A stretch of 64,000 nucleotides of DNA from Bugula neritina (Eukaryota > Animalia > Bryozoa): assembly GCA_964035545.1 (NCBI GenBank), contig OZ037773.1:10445751-10509750 (forward strand), read 5' to 3'. The notes under the pieces were generated by a model. That model did no database searches. It was given only the letters and a program-made list of their open reading frames with translations, and was not told where the DNA came from. Positions within the stretch are counted from its first letter, which is position 1; each line of letters opens with the position of its first letter. The position numbers were made by a program, and so were the translations under genes. Shown piece after piece: positions 1 to 56,242 of this stretch.

Positions 1-234
1 GGTTATAATTGCTCCTGTGCCTCATTAGAAAAGTTTTTAGTTTGCTTTAAAAACAACCTTTTCTCTCTCAGGGTTCATACAGGGATAATGACTATAAACT
101 TGCGTGACTTTTTTATATCACTTCATAATATTATATATAGCCTTTTTTTAGATGTTGATTTTTAAAAATGTAAGAAATTGTTTTATTCTATATTCTTGAA
201 TCTTACTTTTATTCAGATAAGGTTGCTGCAAGTC

Positions 235-3200
235 TTATCTATGTTCTGCATTATTACCCTCTGCATCTAGTGTTCCTGTAAAAGAAATTAACATTTCAAT
301 TAATTTCTTTGCAGCAGTCTGCCTATGAGGTCAAAAACTATTCTCAAAAAAAATGTTTTTGCTATATTGACTGAACTTATAAGGATTATAAATAGCAATT
401 ATGCATAATTATGACACCTAGTGTGACACCTAGAGTGACACTTGTGATACCTAATGCGGCAGCTAGTAGTGTGACGCTTGTTGTGACGCTTAGTATGACT
501 GGCTTCATGTCGCTTTAAATACAGTTTATTCTCAATCACAGTAAACAACTTTAATTCAAAGCAATAAACTAAAATAATAATTTTGTATAAATATATTATA
601 TAAGATTTAAGTATTTCACAAGTATCATAGGTATTTACAGGCATGCAGCCACAAGTCTGTAGAATTCTTACATCATATATAAAATCTATCAAATTTTTAG
701 GAAACCATTCCAGGGTTCTTCTACTGCTCCTATTTCCAGGTTTATACGAGTAATACTTTATATTTTAGCTAGTTTTTTGGAATTGTTAAGCACTAATCAT
801 TTACCAGTTCTGGCTTCATCTGCTTCTTTCTCTCCATCTTCAGCCGTTTGCTGTGATTGTTTAACAACCACACGTATGTTCTGTACATACAAATAGGAAT
901 ATGTTATATGAGATGATCAATAGGAACAATTTATACACACTATAAACAGGTAGCCTACATTAAAATGTTATGCACTTATTCATTACAACAAATTTACATT
1001 AATGCAGTTTTAAAACTGCTGAATCCTAAGTTTTTTTATGCTTTAGTTACAATAGAAAGATGCAGTAAATTTTATTATGATATATGGCTATTATTTGTAT
1101 TGGAACAAAACTTTGCTCTTTTAATTTCATAGTGATTATAAATACTATAAATGCTTTCCCTGAACTATTTTTAAAAAGAATTTTACAATTATCGCGTTTA
1201 TATAACAGTTTGCGTTTAATCCAAATATTTACTGGGTGATATACTTAAGTCTGACCAAACTTTAGAAAAGAAAATCATTACTATTTTATTATACGTACAA
1301 TTGTAGAATAATAGCTATAAAAATATTTTTCAAGAAAAAATACATGCTAGAAGCACGTGAGGGTGATTTTATACAACACATTAAACTAGTTCCAGCAACC
1401 GCTTATAACACATGTCAGCTTATTATTTTAAACAACTTATTTAAATTGAAAAACTTGCTTAGCTTTAAAAATTATACCTTCATCTCCCAATCTATATCAT
1501 CCTGGGTTTGTTCAAGCTGTTTAAAAGTTTTAGATCTCATCTCTTCTTCCAACTTTTGCTCTTTCAACGTCTGTATATGCCCCCTAGCAATCTTGGTTCT
1601 TTCAGCTATTCTATCTCGAGCGTCCATAATATCTTCTTGCAGGTCACGATACTGTCCATCAAGTTTTCTATAACTTAATCTTTCATTATCCAACTTTTGC
1701 TGCAGATCTCTGTTTAAATAGATCAGTAACCGATTACTTACAATTACATTAACAATCTAACTGTAGTAACAGAGTTGTGCTAAACGTAAAAACCCTCCTG
1801 TTCATGCAGTCACTATTGCTATAAATTAGAGACAATATATAGGTATATAAAACTAAACTTCAACTTTCCTATTTTCAACATCTAAATGTATACATATTTC
1901 ATCTATGTGACTATTTATACTCGTACTTAGTAAAAATAAAATATTATAAACAATGTATATCAGAAAAACAAAAAAATAATTTGGAAAATGTGAAAACGTA
2001 TTAAAACATACTCTATTTCTATTTGTAGTTCTTTTCTTTCTTCAACACTTAATTTAGGTTCTTCAGCTTCTCTTTCTCTTTCTGCTATTATCCTAAAATA
2101 GTAAAGATTAGTGAAGACAACTTAATGATATTTTATTCAACTTGAGAAACAAATTATTGGACAATCTTAAAATTTTTTCATTGTGAATATGTTTATAAAT
2201 TCAATTTTGCTACAATTGCCTTATTATTATATGATTAGTTTTAATTATCGTCTCCAACCTAATTTTATGGAAAGCTTTGTACTGCTAATTTCAATTAGCT
2301 GCAAAATGAATTCTTTGACTTTTTATAGAAGTTTGTTTAATTTTAGTTTCAACTAAATTGAACCCATTTTATCTTGATATTATACTGCATGTCTAGAATT
2401 AAATCAAGATTGCTTATAGAGGCTATATTTTTATCCCAGGTTATCATATTTATAGAATAAACATAAAAAGAGAATTTTCCCAGCTAACAAGTTATTATTG
2501 AGTTTACACGCATGTAATATGTTGATTAGGAAATCACGACTACATTGAAATACCTCATATTAGCATCAGTATCATATAATATTAACAGATAAAGACTAGA
2601 TTCCACTCAGCTAAACAACATATTTGCATAAATTATATATTATTATGCTAAGCACTGCATCTCAATATGACAGGTTATGCGCAGATAAAAGGAAAACATT
2701 GATGTGGAATTGTTTTCGTATACTATATTAGTTATATTTCTGCCATTTTACTGGGCATGTCAGCAAAATTTAATTAATAATTATACTAAGAAGTTATGTG
2801 CTAACACTATAGTTTCGTACGATATATAATATATATATAATTTATAAAGTTAAATCCTGCTTTGTCAGAAAGTTTGATAATTCTTGGATGTAATACATTA
2901 ACATTGTTGGTGCAAATACAGCCAAATTCCCAACTTAACCCCAAACCCCATAACCATAGCCAAATGTAACTATACTTGGCTCCATCAGAAGTACTTTTAT
3001 TGGCACTTGAGCAGTTTAATCTTGATACTCCTTTCACTATGCACCATCCTTAGATAAGATGTAGGATCAAATTATAAACAAACAATGCTAAGCTATTTTG
3101 ACATCCTATAAAAAGCTATAGAATAACAGAAGTTTAATTAGATATAGATAGCACTGTATAATTATAGCTTTTTCATCAAGAGAAGACTAAATATTGTTTA

Positions 3201-4252
3201 TGCATCATATGTTAGAAAAAACACGTACTTTGTATAAGTTTCTAATATTTTCAAGAGTGTTTCAAAATCTTTTGTTGGCTGCATGTATTTCTTAAGTTTC
3301 TCCTCTTTCTACAATTACATAATAAGAGTAGGTTGTATCACATAATAATTGTTATAAATAATTATTATGAGTTGTGGCCTAACCTTAATATGTTGTAAAC
3401 TAGCCAACAAACAATTATAGTAATTTATTATCCGTAGAATAATCTTGCCTTATTTTTTTTTTCTAGACAAAAGCAATCTTTTGTCTCGATTAATTTTTTT
3501 GAAATTTCGGCATAGAAATCTAGAAAATTACATCTTTCATCTTCATCATCGAAGCTGTGAGAGGTTTTTTTGTGAACAATCTTATGCCGTGTGTCTCTGA
3601 AGTTTTTAATTTTCTTAGATTTTTCATCTTGGCTTAAAAATCCATCTGGTACCTTTTGAATGAGTTCGTCATAGTGCTTGTCATATATGATGAATATCCA
3701 TTCATGCATCAGTTCCAGGACAATCTCGTTCAATTCATCCTGGGTTGACGTTTGAAACCTTCTATTAGACAGTTTAGCAGGGACTGCCTCATTCTCAAAC
3801 CATTCAAAAGAACCTATGTCATCATCGGTGTAGAGTTTGTTTTGATAAGCTTTTGCTCTATTGTAGTGATTATGCAGCACTTTTTGGAAAAGTGCTGCCA
3901 GCTTTGGTGTCTTCAATCCTAAGGGACAACTTTCTGAAACCTGTCTTTTTATGAAGACTGTTTTTTGCAACTCCCCCAATTTATTTTTTACTCGATTTGC
4001 ATCTTTGTTGCAGCTATGATAAATATCCCAAACAATGGACTGGATGAGCAAAGATTCCAATTTACCAGCCAAAATGACAGCCACAGACAGGTCTGTCCAT
4101 CCTTTTAATCTGCTAGTGAGATCTTCTGCAGTACACCCTGATTGACTAGTCTGAGATTCTTGAGTAGCTGTAGAAACTTGTTTTGGTCTGTTAGTAAAAT
4201 TTTGAGCAATTACATTAGCCCAAGTTCCAGAAGCCCCTTGCTGGCTCATCAT
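235..4252 (-). CDS. HEPN-like domain + coiled-coil protein, paralog A (~437 aa; coding exons 4252-3449, 3308-3229, 2092-2012, 1709-1478, 880-805, 275-235)
   Basis: The 276-aa ORF (3428-4258) and 73-aa ORF (1472-1693) join in frame through phase-compatible splice sites (first intron AAG|GCAAGA GC-AG, the rest GT-AG). The same exon structure recurs in paralog C. Motifs GKLESLL and RDTRHKIVH (3589-3572); later exons are E/K/R/Q heptad-rich. The last exon is the least certain. Confidence 0.8.
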
Positions 4253-4475
4253 GACCAAACTGGTGAATTGATGAGTATACCACGAAAACTTTAGTCATCC
4301 GCTAAAGTATCTAAAATATAAACAATTTGTTTCCACATTTACGTAAATATTATTATTATATAAATATGTGCTCCCTGTGCATTCTCTGTTTGAAATAAAG
4401 TTTCATTATTTACCTATATTCATACTGGAATAAAAGCAGACACATCCTTTTGTTTTCAGCCATGTAATTAAAGTT

Positions 4476-7085
4476 AGACTATACAGTACATTACTTGTAT
4501 ATATGGTAATACTACAGACTATACAGTACATCACTTGTATATGGTAATACTACAGACTATACAGTACATCACTTGTATATGGTAATACTACAGACTATAC
4601 AGTAAATCACTTGTATATGGTAATACTACAGACTATACAGTACATCACTTGTATATAGTAATACTACAGACTATACAGTACATCACTTGTATATGGTAAT
4701 ACTACAGAATATACAGTACATTACTTGTATATGGTAATACTACAGACTATACAGTACATCACTTGTATATGGTAATACTACATACTATACAGTACATCAC
4801 TTGTATCTGGTAATACTACAGACTATACAGTACATCACTTGTATATGGTAATACTACAGACTATACAGTACATCACTTGTATATAGTAATACTACAGACT
4901 ATACAGTACATCACTTGTATATGGTAATACTACAGACTATACAGTACATCACTTGTATATGGTAATACTACAGACTATACAGTATATCACTTGTATATGG
5001 TAATACTACAGACTATACAGTACATCACTTGTATATGGTAATACTACAGACTATACAGTACATTACTTGTATATGGTAATACTACAGACTATACAGTACA
5101 TCACTTGTATATGGTAATACTACAGACTATACAGTACATCACTTGTATCTGGTAATACTACAGACTATACAGTACATCACTTGTATATGGTAATACTACA
5201 GACTATACAGTACATTACTTGTATATGGTAATACTACAGACTATACAGTACATCACTTGTATCTGGTAATACTACAGACTATACAGTACATCACTTGTAT
5301 ATGGTAATACTACAGAATATACAGTATATCACTTGTATATGGTAATACTACAGATTATACAGTACATCACTTGTATATGGTAATACTACATACTATACAG
5401 TACATCACTTGTATATGGTAATACTACAGACTATACAGTACATCACTTGTATATGGTAATACTACAGACTATACAGTACATTACTTGTATATGGTAATAC
5501 TACAGACTATACAGTAAATCACTTGTATATGGTAATACTACAGACTATACAGTACATCACTTGTATATGGTAGTACTACAGACTATACAGTACATCACTT
5601 GTATATGGTAATACTGCAGACTATACAGTACATCACTTGTATATGGTAATACTACAGACTATACAGTACATCACTTGTATATGGTAATACTACAGACTAT
5701 ACAGTACATCACTTGTATATGGTAATACTACAGACTATACAGTACATCACTTGTATATGGTAATACTACAGACTATACAGTACATCACTTGTATATGGTA
5801 ATACTACAGACTATACAGTACATCACTTGTATATGGTAATACTACATACTATACAGTACATTGCTGTATATGGTAATACTACAGACTATACAGTACATCA
5901 CTTGTATATGGTAATACTACATATTATACAGTACATCACTTGTATATGGTAATATTACAGACTATACAGTACATCACTTGTATATGGTAATACTACAGAC
6001 TATGCAGTACATCACTTGTACATGGTAATACTACAGACTATACAGTACATCACTTGTATATGGTAATACTACAGACTATACAGTACATCACTTGTATATG
6101 GTAATACTACAGACTATACAGTACATCACTTGTATATGGTAATACTACAGACTATGCAGTACATCACTTGTATATGGTAATACTACAGACTATACAGTAC
6201 ATCACTTGTATATGGTAATACTACAGACTATACAGTACATCACTTGTATATGGTAATACTACAGACTATACAGTACATCACTTGTATATGGTAATACTAC
6301 AGACTATACAGTACATCACTTGTATCTGGTAATACTACAGACTATACAGTACATCACTTGTATATGGTAATACTACAGACTATACAGTACATCACTTGTA
6401 TATGGTAATACTACAGACTATGCAGTACATCACTTGTATATGGGTAATAGTACAGACTATACAGTACATCACTTGTATATGGTAATACTACAGACTATAC
6501 AGTACATCACTTGTATATGGTAATACTACAGACTATACAGTACATCACTTGTATATGGTAATACTACAGACTATACAGTACATCACTTGTATATGGTAAT
6601 ACTACAGAATATACAGTACATCACTTGTATATGGTAATACTACAGACTATACAGTACATCACTTGTATATGGTAATACTACAGACTATACAGTACATCAC
6701 TTGTATATGGTAATACTACAGACTATACAGTACATCACTTGTATATGGTAATACTACAGACTATACAGTACATCACTTGTATATGGTAATACTACAGACT
6801 ATACAGTATATCACTTGTATATGGTATTACTACAGACTATACAGTATATCACTTGTATATGGTAATACTACAGACTATACAGTACATCACTTGTATATGG
6901 TAATACTACAGACTATACAGTACATCACTTGTATATGGTAATACTACAGACTATACAGTACATCACTTGTATATGGTAATACTACAGACTATACAGTACA
7001 TCACTTGTATATGGTAATACTACAGACTATACAGTACATCACTTGTATATGGTAATACTACAGACTATACAGTAAAATACAGACT
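4476..7085. repeat. 38-bp minisatellite (GACTATACAGTACATCACTTGTATATGGTAATACTACA), about 68 units, in intron 1 of paralog A
   Basis: Contiguous tandem units with point variants and no spacers. Confidence 0.97.
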
Positions 7086-8637: not shown

Positions 8638-11600
8638 TTAGCTCGATCGGACTAGTACAACTAATTTTGATATTGGTCGAATTAAATAGACTCTTTTATT
8701 GGAGTCTTTGGGGTATGTTTTACTACCAACAAGCACCCTAACTGATCTAACAACGCTGTCATGAGACAGGTTGCATTCTACGACACGTGCTAAAGGCCAC
8801 TGATTTCTTACTGTATTGTCATCACACAGTAGAACGATATCCCCCACCTTGATCTCTGGTACTTTATTTACCCATTTTTGCCGCGACTGTAAATAAAGCA
8901 AGTATTGCTTGCGCCAGCGTGTCCAAAATTCATTTGCCAACTGCTGGACCACTCTCCAACGCTTCCTCGCATATATGTCTGCCTCTTCAAATGTGCTTGG
9001 AGGTGGTAGAACAACGTCAGACTTCATAGTCAACAACATGTTTGGGGTGATTGGAAGCATGTCATCAGTTGTTGAGGTTAATGGGCGACAGTTTATGATG
9101 GCCATCACTTCATAAAACAAAGTTCGTAGCAAAGAGGTAGAGAGCCTCCCACCATGTCTCGTTCCAAGGCCTTGTAGCACAGAGCGGATAGTCCTTATCT
9201 GCCTTTCCCACACTCCTCCAAAATTGCTAGAGTGAGGAGGGTTGAAATTCATTGTGATGTTCATAGATTTAAGTTTGCTGTCGGTCCCATCACTTTGTAG
9301 AAGACTCGCGGCACCAATGAAGTTGGTACCTTGGTCTGATTGAATTGTCTGAATTGGACCCCTAATGGCTACCACAGTCCTGATAGCGTTTATAAAGCTG
9401 TCAGTAGTCATGTCCTCTAAAAGTTCAATGTGAACAGCTCGTGAGGCCATACATGTGACTATCAAGCCATATCGTTTCGATTCCTTTCTACCATCCTTGA
9501 CAATAAAAGGGCCGAAACAATCTAATCCACAGTGGGTGAAAGGAGGGGCTTTGTTAACTCTCACTGATGGTAATGTTGCCATTTGTGGTGTCAAGGGTTT
9601 AGCTTTGATTCTTTTACATGTTACACAGAGACGTAGCTTTGATGAAATTGTGGATTTACCACCAATGATCCAAAATCCCTGTGATCTTATTTTAGACAGA
9701 GTATACTCTAAGCCAAGGTGTCCTAGTTTTGCATGTGTGTCATTTATGATAAGCGTAGTGAGATGACTATGCTTAGGTAAGAGTAAAGGATGTTTTTCTT
9801 CGAATGATAGCAATTTACTGTTTTGTAGCCTTCCTCCCACCCTGAGTAGACCCGCCTTATCTAGAAATGGGCATAGTTTTGCAATGGAGCTATGCTTAGA
9901 TGTAGTCTGAGTTTGTTGGAGTTGCTTGATTTCTAGAGTGAAGAATTCTGATTGAACTGACTTGACCAAAGAGTGTAACGCTTTTTGGCGTTTCTCTTGC
10001 TGAGTGAGAGGGGTTTTGCATAGTGCTGTTTGGATTCTAGCAATAACCTTAAGAGTGTAATCTAGGTTAGAGAAAATGGTTATACGCTGACTAAGAGGAG
10101 CAAGGATGTGTTGAGTGGCTAATGCAACTTTCACTTCTTGATCGTCATGTGAGTTGATGAATTTTTTCTGATGAGGGAGTATGAGAGGTTCATTCCACAA
10201 GAAGTCTGGTCCTGTGAACCAAATGCACTCAGGAGAGAAAATTTGCTTTGGTGATAACCCACGTGATGCATGATCTGCAGGGTTGAGTTTAGTTGGGACA
10301 TGAAACCAGTTGTCGGCATTGGAGCCGTCACGGATTTGCTGAACTCGATTTGCAACAAATGTGTGATATCTAGCCTGTGTGTTCTTTATATAACCAAGAA
10401 CTACTTCTGAGTCAGAATAAAAGTACTGAGCTACATTGTCCATACCTAGCTCTTCTGCTGCCTTGAGGCTTAAATCTACAGCCCCACGTGCTGCTTGAAG
10501 TTCCAATCTGGGAACAGTAATAGCTTTGAGCGGAGTGACACGACCTTTGCTACAGATTAAAGCAACATGCACACGTTTGGCTGGGCTTACAAATCGCAAG
10601 TAGGAGCATTGGCCGTAGCCCGTTGTACTCGCGTCGCTAAAGGTATGGAGCTCAACCTTAGCAGGTGTTCCAAATGATGATGGTACGTAGTTTCTAGGAA
10701 TTGATAGGTGTTCAAGATCTTTGAGGCTTTGTTTCCATGGCAACCATTTTGCCAGCATGCTTTCATCTAAAGGATCATCCCAGTCTAAATGTTTTCTGCA
10801 AAGATCTTGGAGAACCATTTTACCTTGCAGTATAACCGGTGATATGAGGCCAAGTGGATCAAAGACCGAGGCTACATTTGAGAGCACACCTCGTCTAGTG
10901 TTGGGCTTATCAGCGAGATTAACTTGAAACTGAAAGGAATCTTGCTCAGAATTCCACATCAATCCCAAAGTTCTTTCAGTTGGAAGACAGTCAGAGTTTA
11001 GGTCAAGATCATGCAGAGTTGCAGATTGTTCAGATTTGGGGAATGAATTTAATACTTCTTTCTCGTTAGAAAGAATCTTGTGCAAGTGTACTTTACCTTG
11101 TTGGCAAATTCTCATTGCCTCAGTGAGTACTTTTGTTGCAGATGTTGCGTCAGGCATACTAAGCAAGCCGTCATCCACATAGAACTGATTTCTAATGAAG
11201 TTTCGGGCTTGTTGACTTGATGGATCATCTGTGCTGTATTGGTCAGCCAGATAACGTAGGCCATATGTTGCACATGCAGGAGACGAGGTCGCTCCAAACA
11301 CATGCACTTTCATGCGGAACACTGCTATTTCACCACGTTCATCTAGCCAGAAAAATCGGAGATAATCTGTATCTTCCGTTGCAACACGAAATTGGTGAAA
11401 CATTCGCTCAATATCACATGTAACAGCAATCTGTTCCTGGCGGAAGCGAAGGAGGATACCAGTTAGACTGTTTAGATAATCTGGACCTGTCATGAGATAG
11501 TCGTTTATGCACTTTCCATCTGTCTTTGCAGCACCATCGAAGACTACTCTAATCTTGCCTGGCTTCTTTGGATGCCATACCTCGAAATGTGGTATGTACC

Positions 11601-14600
11601 ATGTGCTGTCCTCATGGCTAGCTAAGCCTTGTGGAACTATTTCAGCCTCACCCTTGCTAATGAGGTCTTCCATGAACTTTTTGTACTGATTTTCCAAGTT
11701 TTGATTCTTAGAGAACTTTTTCAGTAGTGAATTGAATCGGTTTTTTGCTGTTTTAAAACTGTTATTTCGTGGTGGTTTGTGTTTGAAAGGTAGAGGCATG
11801 GTGACATGACCATCAATGATCTTTGTTTCTTGTTTCATGAGAGACAAAAATGCTCGGTCTTCTACAGAAGCCGCTTCTTTGTCTGTTACACATTCCTTGA
11901 AATCTTGAGCCAATATATTTATTATTTTGTTAATTTGTTTTGATGTTTCAGTTTGGCATTTGAAAGATACTGTGGTTTTAGCTTTCTTGGGTGAATGAGT
12001 TACGGTTTTATTGACTATTGTTGTTTTGCTGCCTGAATTGTCATCATGTGTGTTATTTGTAGCTAGACTACCCATGATAACCCACCCTAGGTCAGTACGT
12101 ACGCCAAATGGTTCATCGTCTGCGTCGTTTCCCACTACTACCTCTCTAGGTTTGAAGGCTAATGGGCAGTTGCCTCCAATGAGTAGACCTACTGAAATGT
12201 TTTGTCCCTTGACCATGTTTTTTGCCAAGTCTTGTAAATGTGGCCAGGCGGTAAGAGCACCCGCCTGTGGAATAGACTCATACTTAGCAGGTATTTCTTC
12301 TGCAGAATACACATTAGGAAGTTTCACCTCCTTATTGCAGCTATATCCTTTGATAATTAGGTCATCGGTTACCATTGTATCTAGCTCAAAGTTTTGGTGT
12401 GTCATTGTTGCCATTGGCAGTTTAGTTGGTTTTTTGGTGCATGTGAGTTGTTCAACAATAGAATTGGTTATATAACATGAGTCGCTGCCTGAGTCAAGGT
12501 TGGCATATGTTAATACTTTTGTATGTGGATCTTTGACAGAAGAAACCCAAACAGGAAGAGTCATAGACATGAGTGTTTGTGATGTATTTATGGAAAGATT
12601 ATTGCATACTGTGCTATCTTTATTTTGGTTTGAACATTGCATTTTACTTTCATCTGCTTGCTTTGTGGGTTGAGATGTGTATTTCTGGTGAAATATTGTG
12701 GGATGAGCTTGCTTACATGTCTCACATACTGGTTTCATGTTGCAGTTTTTGTAACTGTGACCGCTTACGGCACATTTGAAACATAAGCTGTTGCTAGCAA
12801 GGAAGTCATTTACTTGTTGAGCAGAAAGTTTTGCTAAATTCCAGCAGTGAGCAGTGTGGTGTTTCCATCTGGGTTTTTTGTTTGAGAGGCAGTATGCACA
12901 TTCTGGTTCTTTTCTCTGCTTTTGGTCAAATGACAGGCTGTTTTGTTGTTTTGCTGACTGGCTGTCAGTGTGTTGTGACTTATTAGCATGTTTTTGTTGA
13001 TTTTTGACTAATTCTGAAGTTTTTGAAACTATTGGTGTTGGTAATGTTGTTTCAGATTTTAATGTAATTGAGTGTTTGCTGTTGTTTTGTTTGGTGATTG
13101 GCTTGAATGCAGTTTTACTGGACCCACTTTTATATTTTTCTCTCAAATTGCTACAAGAAATTTTAGCCTCATGTGCTACAAAGTCTGCAAATTTATGAAA
13201 GGAAGGGAACACTTTTCTCTTTTCCTCCTCTGCAATGGCATGTCTTAACCATCGTTCTTGAAGGTTGTTGGGCAGAACACTCGCTAGCTTTTTGTTCTCC
13301 CGTTTTCTGTCCAGGACTTTTAAACCAGATATCTGCCTTGAGGCAGATAGACATTGGTTTAAGAAGTAACTGTAACTCTTGAGAGATTTGGCATCAGTTA
13401 CTCTAGGCCATGCTTCTAGTCGGTCTAGAAACTGCTCTTCAATCAGCTCTTCCGAACCAAACTCAGTTTCGAGAGCATGTAATGCATCTTGATACGCATT
13501 TGAACTTTGCAATGAAAAATAGCCCCTTATAGCCTGCTTGGCATCGCCATCCACATACTCTCTCAACAAATGGAGCTTCTGTAAATCGGTATATGGACAA
13601 GAACCAATCAAACCATCAAAGGCCAGCTTCCAATCTGCGTACTCAAGCGGATCACCAGTAAACTTGTCAGGAGTGGGAAGATGATTGGCTTGCATTGTCA
13701 TAGCGGCGGCCATTGAGTCACCTATACTCTTCCCTATAGCAGCAGAGAAATCTGTAGTGGTCAGATTGGTAAGTGGGTTAGGTGATTGCAAGTGTGTATG
13801 TGTGGGATGAGTATTTTGGTGTGTGGGAAGATGAGCAGCTGAGTTGACTTGTGGATATTGTTCATAAGGATCTTTGTGGATACCTGGGCTTTGGTGAGGC
13901 AACTCCTCCTTAGTCATTAAAGACTGCTTTATATCGTGAGCTGGTTGACCTCCAGTTGATGGGAATTGATTTGAGAGGTCAATATGATGTGGAGAATGCA
14001 GAAATGGTGAAGGCTTCGATGAGTTATGAGATGCTCTAGAAGGGGGTCTCATGAGAGTATCTCTAAGCTCAGTTTCAAGCTCATCGTCTAGGGCTTGCTG
14101 AAATGCATTTAGCTGAGCTTTCTCTGCATCGATTTCAGCTTTGAGTTTCAGCTCGGCAATGTGGCCTTTGCGAGTGAGGATTTGCTCTTTGTGCTTGAGC
14201 TCAAGACGCTGTATTTCCTCTTCAACCTGCCGAGCTTCACACTCTGCTTGAAACTTTGCTTCAGCAGCAGCAACTTTAGCCGCAGATTTAGCTAATTGAG
14301 CTTTATAGTATGATGCGTTAGATTTGGAAGATCTAGATGTACCAGTAGTTCTTGTTTTCCAAGAACCACTAGCGGAATCAGGTGCATGAGATGAGGATAT
14401 GTCACTAGCTCCAGAATGTCTAGAATTGCCAATATGGTGACTAGAATGATGAGATTTCTTTGACTTGGAGTGATTAGATTGATAATCAGAACTATGTACG
14501 CTGACGGATTTGGCAGGCCCAGCGCGTTCCGACTCAACTGAATTTTTTGACTTACTCGAGGAATGACTAGCATGCGATTTGACAATTTTTGAATTATCTG

Positions 14601-15006
14601 AGGGAGGGATGGATGGTAACACGCGAGATCTTACATCAACTTTTGCTATTTTGAAAGTGCTATTTTCGCCGTCAGAACTATTGGCGTCCATTTCATGAAG
14701 CCAATGCTCAAGTTTTGTTAAAATAGTTTTTCTATCGCCTGCAATACGATCAAATTCACGCAGTATATTTCGCAGCTTCTCCTCACTTATACCTAAACCG
14801 CGAGCTTCTGTTAAATGTTGTTCGGCTTCTTGTACAGTTTGATTGTTTAGAAGCTGTTTTCGCAGCTCTTTTGCGCGAATTAATGTAATGTTGTCCGCCA
14901 ATTCTCGAGTTACTAGCAAATGGAATTCACTAATAATTTCTAATGATATTTTTATATGCTCTAAGTGTTGCTGAACACGCAGCCGTGCGCTATGATAATG
15001 ACTCAT
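8638..15006 (-). CDS. BEL/Pao gag-pol polyprotein (2122 aa): gag, three Cys/His knuckles, aspartic protease, RT, RNase H, integrase
   Basis: Motifs FTGDPLEYADW (Pao gag), CAYC..HHTAHC / CFKCAVSGHSYKNC / CETCKQAHPTIFH, LDSGS, KIRVVFD...YVDD, HTFSDAS...PRLEL...NPAD, H..H..C..C plus DCFGP/SDQGTNF/GGVWER, and a C-terminal WPLARV domain. No internal stops. Confidence 0.97.
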   Translation of the reverse strand: MSHYHSARLRVQQHLEHIKISLEIISEFHLLVTRELADNITLIRAKELRKQLLNNQTVQEAEQHLTEARGLGISEEKLRNILREFDRIAGDRKTILTKLEHWLHEMDANSSDGENSTFKIAKVDVRSRVLPSIPPSDNSKIVKSHASHSSSKSKNSVESERAGPAKSVSVHSSDYQSNHSKSKKSHHSSHHIGNSRHSGASDISSSHAPDSASGSWKTRTTGTSRSSKSNASYYKAQLAKSAAKVAAAEAKFQAECEARQVEEEIQRLELKHKEQILTRKGHIAELKLKAEIDAEKAQLNAFQQALDDELETELRDTLMRPPSRASHNSSKPSPFLHSPHHIDLSNQFPSTGGQPAHDIKQSLMTKEELPHQSPGIHKDPYEQYPQVNSAAHLPTHQNTHPTHTHLQSPNPLTNLTTTDFSAAIGKSIGDSMAAAMTMQANHLPTPDKFTGDPLEYADWKLAFDGLIGSCPYTDLQKLHLLREYVDGDAKQAIRGYFSLQSSNAYQDALHALETEFGSEELIEEQFLDRLEAWPRVTDAKSLKSYSYFLNQCLSASRQISGLKVLDRKRENKKLASVLPNNLQERWLRHAIAEEEKRKVFPSFHKFADFVAHEAKISCSNLREKYKSGSSKTAFKPITKQNNSKHSITLKSETTLPTPIVSKTSELVKNQQKHANKSQHTDSQSAKQQNSLSFDQKQRKEPECAYCLSNKKPRWKHHTAHCWNLAKLSAQQVNDFLASNSLCFKCAVSGHSYKNCNMKPVCETCKQAHPTIFHQKYTSQPTKQADESKMQCSNQNKDSTVCNNLSINTSQTLMSMTLPVWVSSVKDPHTKVLTYANLDSGSDSCYITNSIVEQLTCTKKPTKLPMATMTHQNFELDTMVTDDLIIKGYSCNKEVKLPNVYSAEEIPAKYESIPQAGALTAWPHLQDLAKNMVKGQNISVGLLIGGNCPLAFKPREVVVGNDADDEPFGVRTDLGWVIMGSLATNNTHDDNSGSKTTIVNKTVTHSPKKAKTTVSFKCQTETSKQINKIINILAQDFKECVTDKEAASVEDRAFLSLMKQETKIIDGHVTMPLPFKHKPPRNNSFKTAKNRFNSLLKKFSKNQNLENQYKKFMEDLISKGEAEIVPQGLASHEDSTWYIPHFEVWHPKKPGKIRVVFDGAAKTDGKCINDYLMTGPDYLNSLTGILLRFRQEQIAVTCDIERMFHQFRVATEDTDYLRFFWLDERGEIAVFRMKVHVFGATSSPACATYGLRYLADQYSTDDPSSQQARNFIRNQFYVDDGLLSMPDATSATKVLTEAMRICQQGKVHLHKILSNEKEVLNSFPKSEQSATLHDLDLNSDCLPTERTLGLMWNSEQDSFQFQVNLADKPNTRRGVLSNVASVFDPLGLISPVILQGKMVLQDLCRKHLDWDDPLDESMLAKWLPWKQSLKDLEHLSIPRNYVPSSFGTPAKVELHTFSDASTTGYGQCSYLRFVSPAKRVHVALICSKGRVTPLKAITVPRLELQAARGAVDLSLKAAEELGMDNVAQYFYSDSEVVLGYIKNTQARYHTFVANRVQQIRDGSNADNWFHVPTKLNPADHASRGLSPKQIFSPECIWFTGPDFLWNEPLILPHQKKFINSHDDQEVKVALATQHILAPLSQRITIFSNLDYTLKVIARIQTALCKTPLTQQEKRQKALHSLVKSVQSEFFTLEIKQLQQTQTTSKHSSIAKLCPFLDKAGLLRVGGRLQNSKLLSFEEKHPLLLPKHSHLTTLIINDTHAKLGHLGLEYTLSKIRSQGFWIIGGKSTISSKLRLCVTCKRIKAKPLTPQMATLPSVRVNKAPPFTHCGLDCFGPFIVKDGRKESKRYGLIVTCMASRAVHIELLEDMTTDSFINAIRTVVAIRGPIQTIQSDQGTNFIGAASLLQSDGTDSKLKSMNITMNFNPPHSSNFGGVWERQIRTIRSVLQGLGTRHGGRLSTSLLRTLFYEVMAIINCRPLTSTTDDMLPITPNMLLTMKSDVVLPPPSTFEEADIYARKRWRVVQQLANEFWTRWRKQYLLYLQSRQKWVNKVPEIKVGDIVLLCDDNTVRNQWPLARVVECNLSHDSVVRSVRVLVGSKTYPKDSNKRVYLIRPISKLVVLVRSS

Positions 15007-22739: not shown

Positions 22740-23943
22740 ACTTTGCAAGTGGATTTCCAAAACAATGTCTGGCCAGTATAAATGTGATAGCTTTAGTATA
22801 TTATTTAGTAATCTTGTTGAGTTGTGTGGTTTGTGTCAGTATAAGTAAGTAGATGTAGTAGATATCTGTAGCTGGAGTTACAATTATTAGTGTATATATA
22901 CAAGTAACAAGTGAAATAGGTATAGAAATTAGGTCAAGTACATGTGTAATTTAGGTCATTGTTTCTTCTGAAGTCATGTTTCTTATTTGTGTCAGTTAAT
23001 TGCATTGTCCTATGTCTTATGTATTAATTAGTAGTGTATTGTCATATAGCGTTTTAATCTCAGTATAGTTATGCTACAGCAAATTTTTCTTGTTTTTGTT
23101 ATATTACTTTTTACTACCAATTTAATGCAAGCAACTAACGCCTCTTATCATATGTATAGTTACATGCAATAAATTGATTCAAATATGAATATAAGAGGCC
23201 TACGTACATGTAGGCAATCCTATTTTCCTGTGGATAATAGACTGGGTTACTTAGTTCACCTCTCGTCTTTGCTTGTCTATCTGTCTGTCTGTCTGTTTGT
23301 CTGTCTGTAAGCTCACTAATTGGTACCTTTCTAGAATGTGCAGAAGATGTAGTTTCTGTTTTAATTGCTGTTACTTATTTAATTAAGAAAAGAAAATTAA
23401 ATCATAACTTGATACTTTAAACACTGTTGGTCACTGCAGACATTAAATTGATTTTCAATTTATATAAATAACTCTGCCATAATTATTATGCTCTGCATTA
23501 GTTGACCCGACCAAACTCAGTTGCTTTCTCGTATAATTGTGGTTGCGAAATGTGTACCTCAGAGTTGTCCTCTCTCTACAAAACCTTCAACCAAATTAAG
23601 TAGATATTTTTTCGTTAGTGTTGACTTTGAAAACTAAAAAAAAAATTTTTTTAATTGATTTGTAATTAATTTTATTTTTATAATTTTTTTCTGTGCAAGT
23701 ATGAGTGTAAAAATGTCGCACTGAAACAATGCCGGAGGGTTTCCTAACCAGATATATTCCGGAGTAAGCTAAGGCTTTAGGATTTATAATATTATTAACA
23801 TAATTAGATTACTTTTATGAAATTTAATTCGAATATATATTATCAAATATGTAATAAAATGTTAAAATTTAGTTAAATTTATTACTAAACGCATGCTCTA
23901 GACTAAGTTAATAAATGCAGTCTTAATTACGTAATTTTAATTT

Positions 23944-24202
23944 GGTAGTAGCACTAGTTCTAGTAGTAGTAGTAGTAGTAATACTAATACTAACAGTAGT
24001 ACTATTACTACTAGTAGTAGTACTACAAGTACTAGTAGTACTAGTACTTGCAGTACCACTACTAATACTACTAGTACTACTACTACTACTAATACTAATA
24101 CTAGTACTCAACAGTACTAGTAGTAGTACTAGTAGTATTACTATTACTACTACTACTACTACTAATACTAGTAGTAATACTATTAGTATTAGTATTACTA
24201 AT
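23944..24202. repeat. Degenerate (TAG/TAC/TAA)n trinucleotide microsatellite
   Basis: Low-complexity triplet repeat. Confidence 0.9.
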
Positions 24203-25049
24203 ACATTGTTACCTGTTCATTGTGTAAATAATTTGCCTCCACTTTACTATCAAATTGATATTATGATTATGATTAATCTAAAGCGTGTAGTTTTATTATT
24301 TTTCCATAATAATATTATATAGTTTCAATTTCTATTTAGTTATTTACCAATGTGATTATGATTATCATTGTCATTATGAGTAATTTCTAATTATCTAGAC
24401 TATTGATAAAAATTAAAATTAAATCTTTAATTGTTACTGATAATGTGAATTTCAAAGTATGCGATAACTTTATAATATTAGAATGATGAATTAATTTCTT
24501 GATACTTTTGCGTTAAACTGATAGTGACACTGAGATACCAGACGGTTGGTGATGATGGCCTCTACAAGAATCGAAACAGACAGTTTCGGAGAGATTACCG
24601 TACCAAACTGCAAGCTGTATGGCGCCAACACAGCCAGGTCTCTCACTAACTTCAAGATTGGTGACCATCGAGATCTCATGCCAGTGAGTTGGTCTCCTTT
24701 GTCACGTTTAGTACTAGTAACTGTTCTCAGCTACTTACTTTGTGTTTTAATATTTGCTACCCTTTGCTCTATGACTGTACTAGTAGCTTAGCATTGCATG
24801 CTAATTGGTTGTAACAATTTGCACTAGGTTAATCTCTGTATCAGCAATAACTATGTACTGTACCAGGCTGAAGTTGTATTCGTTGCTATAGCAACTGTTA
24901 CCATGACTACTAATTAACAGATTGAAGTTGTGAGATGCTTAGCATTACTCAAGAGGGCATCTGCAGAAGTGAACAGAGAGTTTGGTCTGAGGGAAGACAT
25001 TGCAGATCTGATTGTTCAGGCGTCTCAGGAGGTAAGTGCAGGTAACTTG

Positions 25050-25335
25050 CTCACCTGTGTACTACTCACCTGTACAGTACTCACCTGTATACTACTCACC
25101 TGTATACTCTCTACCTGTGAACTACTCACTTGTATACTACTCACCTGTGTACTACTCACCTGTATACTACTCACCTGTACACTACTCACCTGTATACTAC
25201 TTACCTGTACACTACTCACCTGTACACTACTCACCTGTATACTACTCACCTGTACACTACTCACCTGTATACTACTCACCTGTATACTACTCACCTGTAC
25301 ACTACTTACCTGTATACTACTCACCTGTACACTAC
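25050..25335. repeat. 15-bp minisatellite (ACTACTCACCTGTAY)
   Basis: Tandem units in a fumarase intron. Confidence 0.92.
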
Positions 25336-25344
25336 TCTCTACAC

Positions 25345-27422: not shown

Positions 27423-27854
27423 TGCATAGCAGAGTAAGTTAGGGTTTATCTCCCTTGTATAACTTTCTATTACAGGTATGACAAGGCCTGCTCTATTGCT
27501 AAACACGCTCATAGAAATAAACATACACTGAAAGAATCAGCCTTAGAACTTGGGCTATTAACTGAGAGAGAGTTTGATGAGTGGGTATGCCCCGAACTTA
27601 TGATATCTCCTAAGCCATGAGATCTCATGCTAAATTTACTCTATCTCTTCCACAGTATTATTACATTAGTATGCTATATACTAGTTTATTATTCTGTATA
27701 TAGAGAGTAGATAACTCTAGGTATAGGTCTCGGTATTATTGTTTACAGAATATAACAAATATGTTTATCTGTTTCCTTGGTGCTGGAAGTGGGACTTTTA
27801 TATGTTGTCGTGTTTTATAGTCTTTAAGTATGCATCATATTTCCTCTTGTATCA

Positions 27855-36524: not shown

Positions 36525-38885
<2,361 letters not shown>

Positions 38886-52314: not shown

Positions 52315-55300
52315 TTAAAACCACATTTTGTTTCTGTTAATCTTACTTTGATTAAGATTAAGTTGCTGCTCTTCTGCATCATCATCCTCTGCACCTGCTA
52401 TTCACGTAAAAGAAATTATTTTCATTATATTTTTAAAACAACAATATTCTCAAAGCAATAAATTGAAGTAACAATTTTTGTGTAGTTATATAGAATTTAA
52501 GTATTTCACAAGTTTCGCACGTATTTAAGGGTATGCAGCCACAAGTCTGTACAATTATTACATTATAAACTCCATCAATTTTTTATGAAAGCATTCCAAG
52601 GTTCTAGACGTATAGCACTTTATATTTTAGCTATTGTTCAGTACTGTTAAACACTAATCTTTTACCAGCTTTGCCTGCATCTGCTCCTTTGCTCCCTCCT
52701 TCACTTTCACTCACTTCCTGTGGTTTTTTCACAACCACACCTATGTTCTGTACATACGAATAGGAATAAGTTAAATGAGATGATCACTAGACACAGTTTA
52801 TACACACTAAACAGGTAACCTATGGTAAAATTATATGCGTTTAATTATTACGACACTATTAGCAAAATTACATAATTTTAGTTTTAAACCTTTCAAATGT
52901 TAGATTTCTTGACCCAGGTAGTTACAATAATACAGTACTTGTATGACACAATTAATTTTATAATGATTATAACTATTTATATTTAAACAAAGCCATTCTT
53001 ATTTACCTTCATATTAAATAGGTACTATAAAGACTTATATAAATGTTTTATGCTTTTTGAAAAAGAATTTTACAATTATCTTGTTTACATAGCATTTTGT
53101 ATTTAATTCAAATATTTACTGAGTGATATACTCAAGTTCTCACCAAACTTTAGAAAAAAAATCGATGCTATTTATACGTAGAATTGTAGAATAACAGCTA
53201 CAAAAAAGTTTTTCAAGAAAAAATACTTGCTTGGGGCACAAAAGAGTGATTTTATACAACACAATAAATTAGTTCCAGCAACTGCTGTTGCAGCCATTCC
53301 TTATAAGGACATATAACACATGTCAGCTTATTATTTTAAGCATCTTATTCGGAGAAAAAAAACTTTATTAGAATTAAAAAATATACCTTCATCTCCTGAT
53401 CTATATCATCCTGGGTTTGCTCAAGCAGTTTAAAAGTTTCAGTTTTTATCTCTCTTCCCAACGTTTGCTCTTTCAATGTCTTTATGTGCTCCCTGGCAAT
53501 CTTGGTTTTTCCACTTATGTTAGTATGAGCTTTCTTAGCATTTTTAAGAAGCTCAAGATATTCTCTAGTAAGTTCTCCAGATTTTAATCTTTCTCTTGCC
53601 ATCTCTTGCTTCAGATTTCTGTTTAAATAGATTATTAATCCTTTACTTACAATTACATATTAACAATCTAATTGTAGTAACAGAGTTGTGTTGAATGTAA
53701 AAACCCTCCTGTTCAGTCACTATTAGAGACAATATATAGGTATATAAAACTAAACTTAAACTTGTTGAGTTTCAACATCTAAATGTGTATATATTTTATC
53801 TATGTGACTATTTATACTCGTACTTAGTAAAAATAAAATATCACAAACAATGTATACTAGAAAAACAAAAATAATCAAGAAAATGTGAAAAAAATATTAA
53901 AACATACTCTATTTCTCTTTGTAGTTCTTCTCTTTTTTCAACACTTAATTTAGGTTCTTCAGCTTTTCTTTCTCTTTCTGCTATCATCCTAAAATAGTAA
54001 AGATTAGTGAAGACAGCTTTAATAAGATTTTATTCAACTTAAGAAACAAATTATTTGGCATTTTTTCATAGAACAGATGGATAATCTTAAAAATTATTCA
54101 TTATGAATATGTCTATAATTTCAGTTTTGCTACAATTGCCTTATTATAATAATATGATTAGCCTTCATTTTCTGTCTCCCACCTATAATTTTTAAACTGC
54201 AGGCTATATGAAAAGTTTTGTACTGCTAGTTTCAATTAAATGAAAATGAATTCTTTGATTTTTTAGAAGTTCGTTTAATTTTTGTTCCAACGAAATTGAA
54301 TCCATATAGGCCTTTTATCTTTATATATTATACTGTCTAGAATAAAATCAAGATTGCTAGAAGTTATATATTTATATCCCCGATCATCATATTTCTAGAA
54401 CAAACATAAAGAGAGAATTTCCCCACCTAACAAGCTATTAAGTTTACACACGTAATATGTTGATTAGTATATCATGACTATATATATCGAAAGACCTCAT
54501 ATTAGCACCTGCATCATATCATATCATATTATATCATATAAACTAGATTCCGCTCAGCTAATTGTGTAATAAGAAGTTTTGGCTAAACAAAGTGTTTGCA
54601 TAAATTATATATTATTATGCTATAGGCACTGCATCTCAATATGACAGGACATGCACAGATATAAGGAATACATTGATGTGAAATTGTCTCCTACTGTAAT
54701 AGTATTTCTGCCATTTAAGCTAAATTTAATTATTAATTATACTAAGTAACAGTGTGCTGAAATTGTAGTTTTACATGTCATGTATAATATATATAATTCA
54801 TACAATTAAATCCTAAATAAAAGTTTGATAATTCTTGGATGTAAAATATTAGCATTGTTGGTGAAAGAACAGCCAAATTCCCAAATCCCTAACTTAGCCC
54901 CACATAACCATAGCCAAATGTAACTGTACTTGGGTCTATCAGAAGTACTTTTATTTACACAATCAATTTAGTTCTGGTAAACTTTCCACTCTGCACCATT
55001 TTTATAGCAGTAATATCAAATTGTAAATAAACATTGCTAGGCCATATTGACATCCTAAACAGGCTATATAATAACAGAAATTTAACGAGATACAGATAGC
55101 ACTGTATAATTAGCTTTTTTATCAATAGCTGAGAAGACTAAATACTTTTTATACATCTTATTTAAGAAAAACACGTACTCTGTGTAAGTTTCTAATACAC
55201 TCAAGAGCGTTTGAAAATCTTTTTTTGGCTGCATGTATTTCTGAAATCTGTCCTCTATCTACAATTATATTATTAGTAGGTCAGTTATAATAAATATTTG

Positions 55301-56242
55301 CAATAACTAGGAGTGGCCTAACGACAGTAAATTTAATATTTCATAAATTGACAAACTCAAAAGGTAAATTACTACTGTGTAAAATAATCTTGCCTTATCT
55401 TTATCTTTTAAACAAAAGCAATCTTTTTCTTTGATAATCAGTGTTGAAATTCTTTTATAGAACGCTAAAAAATCATCTTTTTCTTGCTCTTTCTGGAACT
55501 TATGAATTGTTCTACAGTGAACAATCCTATTTCTTATCGTTCTAAATTCATCTGTGGTGAGTTTTGTTTTAAATTCCTTTAAAAAATCTTGTGGTACTCT
55601 ACTAATAATTTCGTTATAGTGCCTGGAACAAATTACAGATACCCATTCATGCATCAGCCCCAGAGCCGTCTCTTTCAATTCCGCCTTGTCTGATGGTCGA
55701 TAGCCTGCTTTTGAAAATTTTTCATAAGTTTCAAAGTTTTCAAACCAATCAAAATGAGTTGTTTCTAGGTGATAGCGCCTACCATTAAATCGTTCTGATT
55801 TATAATCACGAAGCAGTTCTCTCAAAGGTTCAGCTAGTCTTGATGTCTTATTTTTTAAGACTAAAGCATCACAATCTTTCTTTTGGTAATATATTTTTAG
55901 GACTGCTGTTTGGAACTCCTTCATGCTTTTTAATATTTTGTCTGCATTTTCCTTGCATTGATCATAAATATCCCAAACAATGTACTGGGTCAGCAAAGAT
56001 TCCATTTTACCAACTAAAATCACTGCCAACGACAGGTCCGTCCATTCTGCTTTTATTCTGTTAAGATCTTTTGCAGTAGGCTCTGGTTGGCTAGTCTGGG
56101 ATTCTTGAGTACCTCTGGACTCTTGTACAGGTTGACTGGGCTGGGATCTCTGAGCAAGTCTGCGCGCAGGCCCTGGTACTCGTGTTTGCTCAGGAAGAGG
56201 CCAATCATCAACATTTAAATCTGAAGCCCCTTGCTGGCTCAT
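52315..56242 (-). CDS. HEPN-like domain + coiled-coil protein, paralog C (exons 56242-55394, 55258-55179, 53988-53908, 53618-53387, 52747-52666, 52394-52315)
   Basis: The 323-aa and 85-aa ORFs join through the same splice sites as paralog A, including the GC donor. Motifs GKMESLL and RTIRNRIVH (55534-55517). The last exon uses a shifted acceptor and is less certain. Confidence 0.8.

What the first reader, a model, noticed from the sequence alone, without database searches (positions are those of the whole stretch)
3449..4252. HEPN-like exon is much more diverged than the flanking introns (paralog A vs C): signature of diversifying selection
Seen: introns and intergenic DNA of A and C align almost base for base (e.g. 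1712-2010 vs 53620-53907, by eye roughly 85-90% identical), and the small coiled-coil exons are nearly identical. The middle of the large exon (between IVWDIY and the R..R..IVH motif) is only about 30% identical in amino acids, carries indels, and stays in frame. Inference: strong positive selection on a specificity or inhibitor-evasion surface, as in arms-race genes. The alternative is gene conversion homogenising everything except this exon.
Basis: partly seen in the sequence, partly recalled or inferred. Interest (0 to 1): 0.78.

Follow-up and report, generated by a model that had tools for sequence, protein, structure and literature searches.

The report
Mosaic, fast-evolving bryozoan HEPN gene pair
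Two neighbouring copies of a bryozoan RNase-like (HEPN) gene carry old, very different versions of their first exon on an otherwise recently shared gene body, a patchwork made by exchange between copies plus selection for protein diversity, as in venom and MHC gene families.

Summary
Between paralogs A (1-4500) and C (52100-56500), exon 1 is 64% identical in DNA and 41% in protein, against 83-89% for introns 2-3 and 78-80% for introns 4-5. Two details are wrong: intron 1 is as diverged as the exon (64-66%), and coiled-coil exons 4 and 5 are only 75-76% identical.

Fourfold sites differ at 16 of 37 positions against 7 expected from the introns (p=6e-4).

Four relatives from an outside Bugula-type sample give conflicting trees, each with 100% bootstrap. 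Exon 1 plus intron 1 groups C with P0002.

Diversifying selection is supported separately:
- family-wide omega is about 1;
- M2a beats M1a (LRT 48, p=3e-11), with 19% of codons at omega about 4;
- exon 4 (5' half) has omega 3.3;
- dN between A and its nearest relative is twice the intron distance.

Recombination weakens the site-model test. This is a new member of a known kind of evolution, in an undescribed HEPN-like family. The scan had noted other HEPN families in this genome, but not this one.

The parts
3449..4249 (-). Paralog A, exon 1 (267 codons): disordered N-terminal tail plus HEPN-like helical domain. It ends at a GC-AG donor (AAG|GCAAGA).
   Evidence: ORF and splice signals. The AlphaFold model is all-helical, and its best fold matches (Z 5-7) are enriched in HEPN domains.
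3809..4015 (-). Hypervariable helical insert of A (about aa 79-147), between the first core helix and the W-x-E-N motif.
   Evidence: Identity between sequence types falls to 0.38-0.60 here. Even A vs A' falls to 0.50-0.67, with a 36-nt indel. Nine of the 13 sites with NEB P>0.9 in the all-columns analysis lie here.
3572..3589 (-). R221-x4-H226, the HEPN-type catalytic motif at the end of a predicted helix.
   Evidence: R and H are invariant in all 7 aligned members. The helix spans 210-225 in the model. Site 223, inside the motif, has NEB P=0.95 for omega>1.
3309..3448 (-). A intron 1, part of the old diverged block.
   Evidence: A-C identity is 0.64-0.66, against 0.96 for A-A'. There are two intron-1 types: the A type, and the C type shared by C, P0003 and P0004 at 0.89-0.92.
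3229..3308 (-). A exon 2 (80 nt).
   Evidence: Splice sites and open frame. A-C identity 0.84.
2012..2092 (-). A exon 3 (81 nt), start of the coiled coil.
   Evidence: A-C identity is 0.94 but A-A' only 0.82, because the 3' part of A' exon 3 resembles P0002.
1478..1709 (-). A exon 4 (232 nt), coiled coil.
   Evidence: A-C identity is 0.76. The 5' half has dS 0.17, dN 0.55, omega 3.25.
805..880 (-). A exon 5 (76 nt).
   Evidence: A-C omega 2.7.
234..275 (-). A, probable last exon with the stop codon (acidic tail).
   Evidence: Reading-frame continuation. This exon is uncertain. C lacks the matching AG acceptor.
55394..56242 (-). Paralog C, exon 1 (283 codons), C-type HEPN-like exon.
   Evidence: Its closest relatives are P0003 and P0002 (dS 0.28-0.34), not A (dS 0.61).
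52666..55258 (-). Paralog C, exons 2-5 and introns 2-4. This 3' backbone groups with A.
   Evidence: C exons are 55258-55179, 53988-53908, 53618-53387 and 52747-52666. Trees of intron 3 alone and of exon 3 to exon 4 give (A,C|P0002,P0004) at 100% bootstrap.
38208..38885 (-). Paralog B, exon 1 (226 codons). An old third member, used here as a control.
   Evidence: 25-29% aa identity to the others. Against its counterpart P0007, exon identity is 0.92, intron 1 is 0.946, and omega is 0.76.
37997..38076 (-). Paralog B, exon 2.
   Evidence: tblastn match to A and C exon 2. Splice sites.
4476..7074 (.). 38-bp satellite just 5' of gene A. The same satellite lies at 38939-42153 (5' of B) and 56453-59814 (5' of C).
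   Evidence: Tandem Repeats Finder. It is also present 5' of A' in the outside sample.

Best explanation
A, B and C are three units of a satellite-flanked tandem array. The genome's size and chromosome number match the published Bugula neritina assembly. Each unit encodes a protein of roughly 430 aa, modelled in full only for A: a HEPN-like putative RNase domain in exon 1, followed by a coiled coil.

The exon/intron contrast between A and C is mainly a difference in age. Exon 1 together with intron 1 (about 3320-4228 in A) exists as old sequence types: an A type, a C type and a P0004 type, with synonymous distance about 0.6-0.7 between them. The rest of the gene (exon 2 onward) was exchanged or homogenised between copies much later by gene conversion or unequal crossover, with distance about 0.1-0.25. 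C is therefore a C-type 5' block on an A-like 3' backbone. Shorter patches have also moved between copies inside exons.

On top of this, the protein is under diversifying selection. About a fifth of codons have omega about 3-4. They lie in the helical insert, around the R-x4-H motif, and probably in the coiled-coil exons 4-5. This selection probably also keeps the exon-1 types from being homogenised.

Shown here: the divergence figures, the conflicting trees, the mosaicism and the site-model result. Inferred: that selection is what protects exon 1, that the protein is an active RNase, and that the family serves defence or another genetic conflict.
For: 1. dS is raised in A-C exon 1: 0.60-0.65 against an intron distance of about 0.19-0.2. 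Fourfold sites differ at 16 of 37 against 7.0 expected (p=6e-4). Neutral sites of the exon 1 + intron 1 block differ at 0.364 against 0.177 elsewhere (p=4.5e-8).
2. Internal control: among C, P0002 and P0003, exon-1 dS (0.28-0.34) equals the intron-2 distance (0.22-0.32). Exons therefore do not mutate faster in general.
3. Exons 2-5 of A-C have dS 0.14, matching the introns.
4. Trees conflict. Exon 1 + intron 1 gives (C,P0002|A,P0004) at 100%, with an A-type branch of 0.32. Intron 3 alone, and exon 3 to exon 4, give (A,C|P0002,P0004) at 100%. Intron 2 is nearly a star.
5. Exon 1 is itself a mosaic, and a PHI-like test gives p<0.0005. A' exon 3 carries a P0002-like patch in A-type flanks.
6. 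Selection: M0 omega 0.96; M2a vs M1a LRT 48.2 (p=3e-11), 16.3 without the hypervariable columns, and 20.3 for the C-terminal part alone. Between A and A', codon positions 1+2 differ at 0.158 against 0.084 for noncoding DNA (p=4e-6), and the C-terminal part has omega 3.1. The 5' half of exon 4 has omega 3.25.
7. ORFs are intact in all 14 exon-1 sequences seen (A, B, C and P0001-P0011), and splice signals are conserved in the seven copies examined.
8. HEPN features are present: an invariant R-x4-H at the end of a helix, a polar residue after the R, an acidic residue in the first core helix, and HEPN-enriched fold matches (criteria from PMC3710099).
Against: No pairwise omega is significantly above 1; the best p values are 0.054. 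The site-model tests assume a single tree, and recombination, which is demonstrated here, is known to inflate them. Alignment in the hypervariable part is uncertain. The codon models were my own implementation, not PAML.

It is unknown whether the outside copies are orthologs, alleles or paralogs, or which sibling species they come from. The direction and timing of the exchanges are not resolved.

The structure model is weak (mean pLDDT 58), and no Pfam HEPN model reaches its threshold (best E=0.08). No expression data were available.
Confidence: 0.7

Rival explanations
1. One reading: A and C duplicated recently, at the age given by the introns, and strong positive selection alone drove exon 1 apart.
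For: Exon 1 is far more diverged than introns 2-5. Site models favour a class with omega>1. dN exceeds the intron distance.
Against: dS in exon 1 (0.6) is three times the intron distance, and omega is about 0.75. Fourfold sites are in excess. Noncoding intron 1 is equally diverged. C's exon 1 is closer to P0002 and P0003 than to A, while its 3' part is closest to A.
Confidence: 0.08
2. The gene has the same mosaic history, but the high protein divergence reflects relaxed constraint (omega near 1) and not positive selection. The variable parts are simply tolerant linkers.
For: M0 omega is 0.96. Pairwise omega values of 0.6-1.2 are not significantly different from 1. Recombination and alignment error can create false omega>1 classes.
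Against: All copies keep long open frames, splice sites and about 28 invariant residues. M2a beats M1a, which already allows a neutral class, also outside the hypervariable region and in the C-terminal part analysed alone. dN in A-A' and in exon 4 exceeds both local dS and the intron distance.
Confidence: 0.17
3. An exon-targeted mutational process raises both dS and dN in the coding exons. Candidates are error-prone repair or mutagenic conversion of the kind speculated for venom genes.
For: Both site classes are raised in A-C exon 1 and in the A-A' hypervariable segment (dS 0.43, dN 0.38). Divergence changes sharply at the intron 3 / exon 4 junction.
Against: Within the C type, exon dS equals the intron distance. 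Exons 2-5 of A-C have dS equal to the introns. Intron 1 shares the excess. The discordant trees point to exchange of existing sequence, not new mutation. In B vs its counterpart the exon is not more diverged than the introns.
Confidence: 0.05

Closest known systems
[quoted passage not shown] Sources: PMC2474615, PMC2711939, PMC6609765.
   Same: These are tandem multigene families with introns more conserved than coding exons and Ka/Ks around or above 1. Short exon segments are replaced by very different sequence while the flanks stay similar. The A vs A' hypervariable segment and the A' exon 3 patch look like this.
   Different: The protein here is an intracellular-looking HEPN-like domain plus coiled coil, not a secreted toxin; no hydrophobic signal-like stretch is evident at the N-terminus by eye, and this was not tested. 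A large part of the exon excess here is shown to come from discordant ancestry, meaning recombination between old types. The venom papers mostly did not resolve that point.
[quoted passage not shown] This rests on my own knowledge (Cereb, Hughes and Yang 1997; Bergstrom et al. 1998) and was not checked here.
   Same: Exon lineages are older than the surrounding introns. There is interlocus or interallelic conversion, mosaic exons, and diversifying selection on a recognition surface. Sequence types are shared across genomes: A type and C type each occur in both samples.
   Different: These are paralogs in an invertebrate array, not known to be alleles. No population data were available, so balancing selection is not shown. 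The molecule is unrelated.
DZIP3/hRUL138-like HEPN expansions in lophotrochozoans, for example the pearl oyster (PMC9646362).
   Same: These are invertebrate HEPN genes with an intact R-x4-H motif, arranged in tandem clusters. Copy number differs strongly between haplotypes or genomes (here 3 against at least 11). An immune role has been proposed for them.
   Different: No member here matches PF18738 even at E<=1. The architecture here is HEPN plus coiled coil, without NACHT. The family is tiny and was seen only in Bugula-type samples.
HEPN superfamily RNases as defined by Anantharaman et al. 2013 (PMC3710099).
   Same: Shared features are an R-x4-H at the end of a helix with N or H after the R, an acidic residue in the first core helix, a helical bundle with a large insert, and rapid sequence evolution typical of conflict systems.
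   Different: No curated HEPN model reaches significance. The fold evidence is at noise-level Z values. RNase activity is untested.

Membership tests
HEPN superfamily | R-x4-6-H motif at the end of helix 3 / start of the following loop | tested here: met
   R221-x4-H226 (A numbering) is invariant in all 7 aligned members and visible in P0005-P0011. The model has a helix at 210-225 followed by a loop. Criterion from PMC3710099.
HEPN superfamily | Polar residue (N, D or H) immediately after the conserved R | tested here: met
   H in A and P0004; N in A', C, P0002, P0003 and B.
HEPN superfamily | Conserved acidic residue in the N-terminal helix (often E-x3-K/R) | tested here: met
   E or D at A position 65, two residues after invariant K63, in all seven members. 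The full E-x3-K form is seen only in B.
HEPN superfamily | Four-helix up-and-down bundle fold | tested here: inconclusive
   The AlphaFold2 model has pLDDT 58 and pTM 0.58 and is all-helical. Foldseek finds nothing at E<=0.001. VIA-align Z values of 5-7 include many HEPN folds: 2hsb, 3o10, 4pqz, 6tug, 8oz7, 8vz6, 1wwp, 1ufb, 1jog, and the MtlR-family entries 3brj and 3c8g. Z values below 8 are common for helical models.
HEPN superfamily | Significant match to a curated HEPN profile | tested here: not met
   The best hits are PF18739 HEPN_Apea (E=0.079, 13.8 bits against a cutoff of 24.4) and PF18735 (E=0.24). A PDB profile search found nothing at E<=10.
DZIP3/hRUL138-like HEPN (PF18738) | Match to PF18738 | tested here: not met
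   Not listed for any of the 7 members at E<=1.
Exon-hypervariable, intron-conserved multigene families (venom-type accelerated evolution) | Intron distance below exon dS and dN, Ka/Ks about 1 or more, tandem paralogs | tested here: met
   A-C: intron distance about 0.19, dS 0.6, dN 0.47. Family M0 omega 0.96. The paralogs sit in a tandem array.
Old exon lineages in homogenised backbones (MHC-like concerted evolution) | Strongly supported discordance between the exon tree and the intron / 3'-part tree | tested here: met
   (C,P0002|A,P0004) at 100% against (A,C|P0002,P0004) at 100%. PHI-like test p<0.0005.
Old exon lineages in homogenised backbones (MHC-like concerted evolution) | Balancing selection maintaining the types within populations | not testable with these tools
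   No population or haplotype sample was available. The only evidence is that A-type and C-type exons occur in both genomes.

The most novel reading that the evidence does not exclude
The array encodes a bryozoan-specific intracellular RNase arsenal for antiviral, anti-transposon or other conflict functions. Its recognition surfaces are the helical insert, the rim of the R-x4-H site and the coiled coil. These surfaces would be diversified by an MHC-like mechanism: old exon-1 'type cassettes' are kept apart by selection and reshuffled among satellite-flanked tandem copies by short-tract gene conversion, with large copy-number differences between genomes. That would be a germline cassette-diversification scheme for an innate nuclease effector in an animal.
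Probability: 0.25. Interest if true: 0.7.

Novelty: new member of a known kind. Interest (0 to 1): 0.45.

Why it matters
Coding DNA more diverged than its introns is a classic flag for arms-race genes. This case shows that the flag can be misleading. Most of the A-C contrast comes from recombination placing old exon types on a young backbone, and only part of it comes from selection.

The gene family itself appears undescribed. A profile search of 1.84 billion representative proteins found only 10 relatives, all from JGI/IMG or Logan records; the five whose contigs were looked up come from one JGI sample (3300003318) and one sequencing run (SRR4020083). The family joins a HEPN-type nuclease motif to a coiled coil in a phylum whose immunity is almost unknown. 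If the proteins are active RNases, they are good candidates for bryozoan innate defence or genetic-conflict factors, and a compact system for studying how gene conversion and selection interact.

Tried and rejected
- The repeat finder on the whole window was swamped by the 38-bp satellite, so I used BLAST and MAFFT in scripts instead.
- I considered that intron similarity might come from a shared transposon. This is rejected: introns 1-2 occur only at A and C in the genome.
- The 86-94% match between the 3' flank of A and 23415-28156 is built partly of genome-wide repeats, so it was not used as evidence.
- I considered a generally faster exon mutation rate. This is rejected by the C/P0002/P0003 control and by exons 2-5.
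- A scan of metagenome contigs with family patterns found no relative.
- No informative hit came from Pfam, a PDB sequence profile or Foldseek against the PDB. The ESM Atlas gave only weak HEPN/DUF4145-like leads at 0.87-0.88.
- No nucleotide similarity was found between the gene body of B and that of A or C. B is an old member and was used only as a control.
- I could not identify the outside sample. SRR4020083 and JGI 3300003318 are not named in the Bugula metagenome paper that I checked.
- No search or fold was run on a joined (spliced) protein. Exon 1 was searched by reference. The small exons were joined only inside scripts, to keep the reading frame for dN/dS.

Full report
**Setting**

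The window is AT-rich eukaryotic DNA (about 30% GC) at G000:C9:10445751-10509750, from a 216,009,554-bp assembly. The size and chromosome count match the published Bugula neritina genome (216.00 Mb, 9 chromosomes; PMC11480708). Earlier notes of this scan give the same name. I did not verify the species by a marker gene.

**Gene structure**

Three minus-strand ORFs share a domain:
- A, 4258-3428
- B, 38885-38127
- C, 56278-55307

For A, a six-exon model keeps an open frame through canonical splice sites: 4249-3449, 3308-3229, 2092-2012, 1709-1478, 880-805 and 275-about 234. Intron 1 is the exception, with a GC-AG donor that is conserved in A, A', C, P0003 and P0004.

The product is about 430 aa. 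It has a disordered tail, a helical domain of about 220 aa carrying an invariant R-x4-H, a coiled coil (exons 2-4/5) and a short acidic end.

C has the same exons at matching positions. B has at least exon 2.

Each gene has the same 38-bp satellite just upstream (4476-7074, 38939-42153, 56453-59814). 44-bp and 25-bp satellites follow in the same order, so this is a three-unit tandem array.

**The observation**

A (1-4500) and C (52100-56500) are collinear.

| Feature | A-C identity |
|---|---|
| 5' flank | 0.82 |
| exon 1 | 0.64 (middle 0.59) |
| intron 1 | 0.64-0.66 |
| exon 2 | 0.84 |
| intron 2 | 0.83 |
| exon 3 | 0.94 |
| intron 3 | 0.89 |
| exon 4 | 0.76 |
| intron 4 | 0.78 |
| exon 5 | 0.75 |
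| intron 5 | 0.80 |

The core observation is real: the exon is much more diverged than most introns, with indels that keep the frame. Two details are wrong. Intron 1 is as diverged as the exon, and exons 4-5 are not nearly identical. The introns are unique to A and C in the genome.

For exon 1 of A vs C, Nei-Gojobori gives dS 0.60-0.65, dN 0.47-0.48 and omega 0.73-0.80. Sliding windows and fixed partitions give omega 0.4-1.8, never significantly above 1.

To avoid artefacts of path counting, I looked only at fourfold sites in codons whose first two bases are unchanged. 16 of 37 differ, against 7.0 expected from noncoding sites of matched base composition (p=6e-4).

Adding intron 1, neutral sites in the block differ at 0.364 against 0.177 in the remaining noncoding DNA (p=4.5e-8).

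**More copies**

Word-based and profile searches found relatives only in JGI/IMG and Logan records. The five whose contigs were looked up (P0001-P0004 and P0007) lie in JGI sample 3300003318; P0001 also lies in run SRR4020083:
- P0001 = A' (72% aa identity to A in the family alignment)
- P0002 and P0003 (C type)
- P0004 (its own type)
- P0007 (counterpart of B)
- P0005, P0006 and P0008-P0011

The reference genome has only A, B and C.

**Pairwise results**

- Exon-1 dS is 0.6-0.8 between A type and the others.
- Exon-1 dS is 0.57-0.67 between P0004 and the C type.
- Within the C type, exon-1 dS is only 0.28-0.34. That equals their intron-2 distance (0.22-0.32), so exons do not mutate faster in general.
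- Intron 2 is nearly star-like among all non-B copies (identity 0.74-0.83).
- Intron 1 falls into an A type and a C type: 0.89-0.96 identity within a type among A/A' and among C, P0003 and P0004 (P0002 is a more distant C-type member, 0.78-0.83), and 0.64-0.70 between types.

**Recombination**

Trees conflict, each with full support:
- Exon 1 + intron 1 gives (C,P0002|A,P0004) at 100%, with a long A-type branch (0.32).
- Intron 3 alone, and exon 3 to exon 4, give (A,C|P0002,P0004) at 100%.

Exons 2-5 of A vs C have dS 0.14, like the introns.

Inside exon 1, P0004 and C are visible mosaics, and a PHI-like permutation test gives p<0.0005. A' exon 3 carries a P0002-like patch (0.86 identity) within A-like flanks (0.95).

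The A vs A' hypervariable segment has dS 0.43 and dN 0.38 next to stretches with dS 0.06. It looks like an imported segment. Its donor was not found.

A and C therefore carry different old 5' blocks (about 3320-4228 in A) on a recently shared 3' backbone.

**Selection**

I wrote Goldman-Yang type codon models (F3x4) and fitted them to six copies.

| Data set | Result |
|---|---|
| All 255 ungapped codons | M0 omega 0.96; M2a vs M1a LRT 48.2 (p=3e-11); 19% of codons at omega 3.9 |
| Without the hypervariable columns | LRT 16.3 (p=3e-4) |
| Hypervariable part alone | LRT 21.9 |
| C-terminal part alone | LRT 20.3 |
| N-terminal part alone | LRT 1.2 |

Sites with posterior above 0.9 in either the all-columns or the no-hypervariable analysis (A numbering) are 18, 79, 86, 96, 97, 105, 108, 109, 112, 126, 147, 157, 198, 212 and 223. 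Site 223 lies inside the R-x4-H motif.

Independent support:
- A vs A' has introns 0.92-0.96 identical, but codon positions 1+2 differ at 0.158 against 0.084 for noncoding DNA (p=4e-6). Fourfold sites fit the introns (8 of 64 observed, 5.8 expected).
- The C-terminal part of A vs A' has Sd 2.3 and Nd 31.7, omega 3.1 (p=0.054).
- The 5' half of exon 4 in A vs C has omega 3.25 (p=0.054).

Control: in B vs P0007 the exon (0.92) is not more diverged than intron 1 (0.946) or the downstream DNA (0.867), with omega 0.76.

Caveats: recombination and alignment uncertainty inflate site-model tests, and no pairwise omega is significantly above 1.

**What the protein is**

No curated family matches. The best is HEPN_Apea at E=0.08, and PDB sequences gave nothing.

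The AlphaFold2 model is weak (pLDDT 58, pTM 0.58) and all-helical. R221-H226 sits at the end of helix 210-225, which is where HEPN domains carry the motif (PMC3710099). Foldseek found nothing. The exhaustive aligner gave Z values of 5-7 with many HEPN folds among the top 50, which is suggestive but within the noise for helical bundles.

I call the domain HEPN-like with intact catalytic-type residues. RNase activity is inferred.

The variable middle corresponds to two long helices inserted after the first core helix.

**Comparison with known cases**

The pattern matches venom gene families, which have conserved introns, fast exons and switched exon segments (PMC2474615, PMC2711939, PMC6609765). 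From my own knowledge it also matches MHC genes with old exon lineages in homogenised introns.

Invertebrate HEPN expansions with copy-number variation and a proposed immune role are known in the pearl oyster (PMC9646362), but this family does not match that Pfam model.

**Verdict**

It is a new member of a known kind of evolutionary pattern, in an apparently undescribed and lineage-restricted HEPN-like family.

No database search or structure prediction was run on a joined, spliced protein.

Noticed in passing
window 4476-7074, 38939-42153, 56453-59814; L003:1-75, L004:1-254: The same 38-bp satellite sits 50-230 bp upstream of the start codon of all three paralogs, and of the A-like copy in the outside sample. 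44-bp and 25-bp satellites follow in the same order in each unit. The satellites may drive unequal crossover, or may act near the promoter.
   Followed up: partly
window 3447-3448, 55392-55393; L007, L008, L009 exon-1 ends: Intron 1 uses a GC donor (AAG|GCAAGA) in A, A', C, P0003 and P0004. P0002 and B use GT at the same place.
   Followed up: partly
window 30947-35737: A Ty3/gypsy-like retroelement with 51-57% GC sits in a genome of about 30% GC, inside the B unit. Its ORFs are long (629, 384, 303 and 291 aa). I only observed it.
   Followed up: no
window 8638-15006: A BEL/Pao-type retrotransposon has one uninterrupted 2122-aa ORF between the 38-bp and 44-bp satellites of the A unit. I only observed it.
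   Followed up: no
G000 whole genome vs JGI 3300003318: The reference assembly holds 3 family members. JGI/IMG records (JGI 3300003318 for the five copies traced) hold at least 11, including B-like forms with long low-complexity inserts (P0011). This is a large copy-number difference or rapid turnover.
   Followed up: partly
window 52390-52420: C has ACGT where A has the ACAG acceptor of its last small exon, so the C-terminal tails of A and C probably differ.
   Followed up: no
L007:317-1357 (P0002): The N-terminal tail of P0002 contains three tandem copies of a roughly 15-aa proline/glutamine/serine-rich unit that is single or absent in the other copies. The disordered tail changes length by repeat gain and loss.
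   Followed up: no
G000:C8:8249824-8250165 and G000:C9:9019180-9019317: The family profile gives weak hits (E 0.003-0.008) over the R-x4-H region at these two places. They may be distant HEPN relatives elsewhere in the genome, and one is about 1.4 Mb from the window.
   Followed up: no
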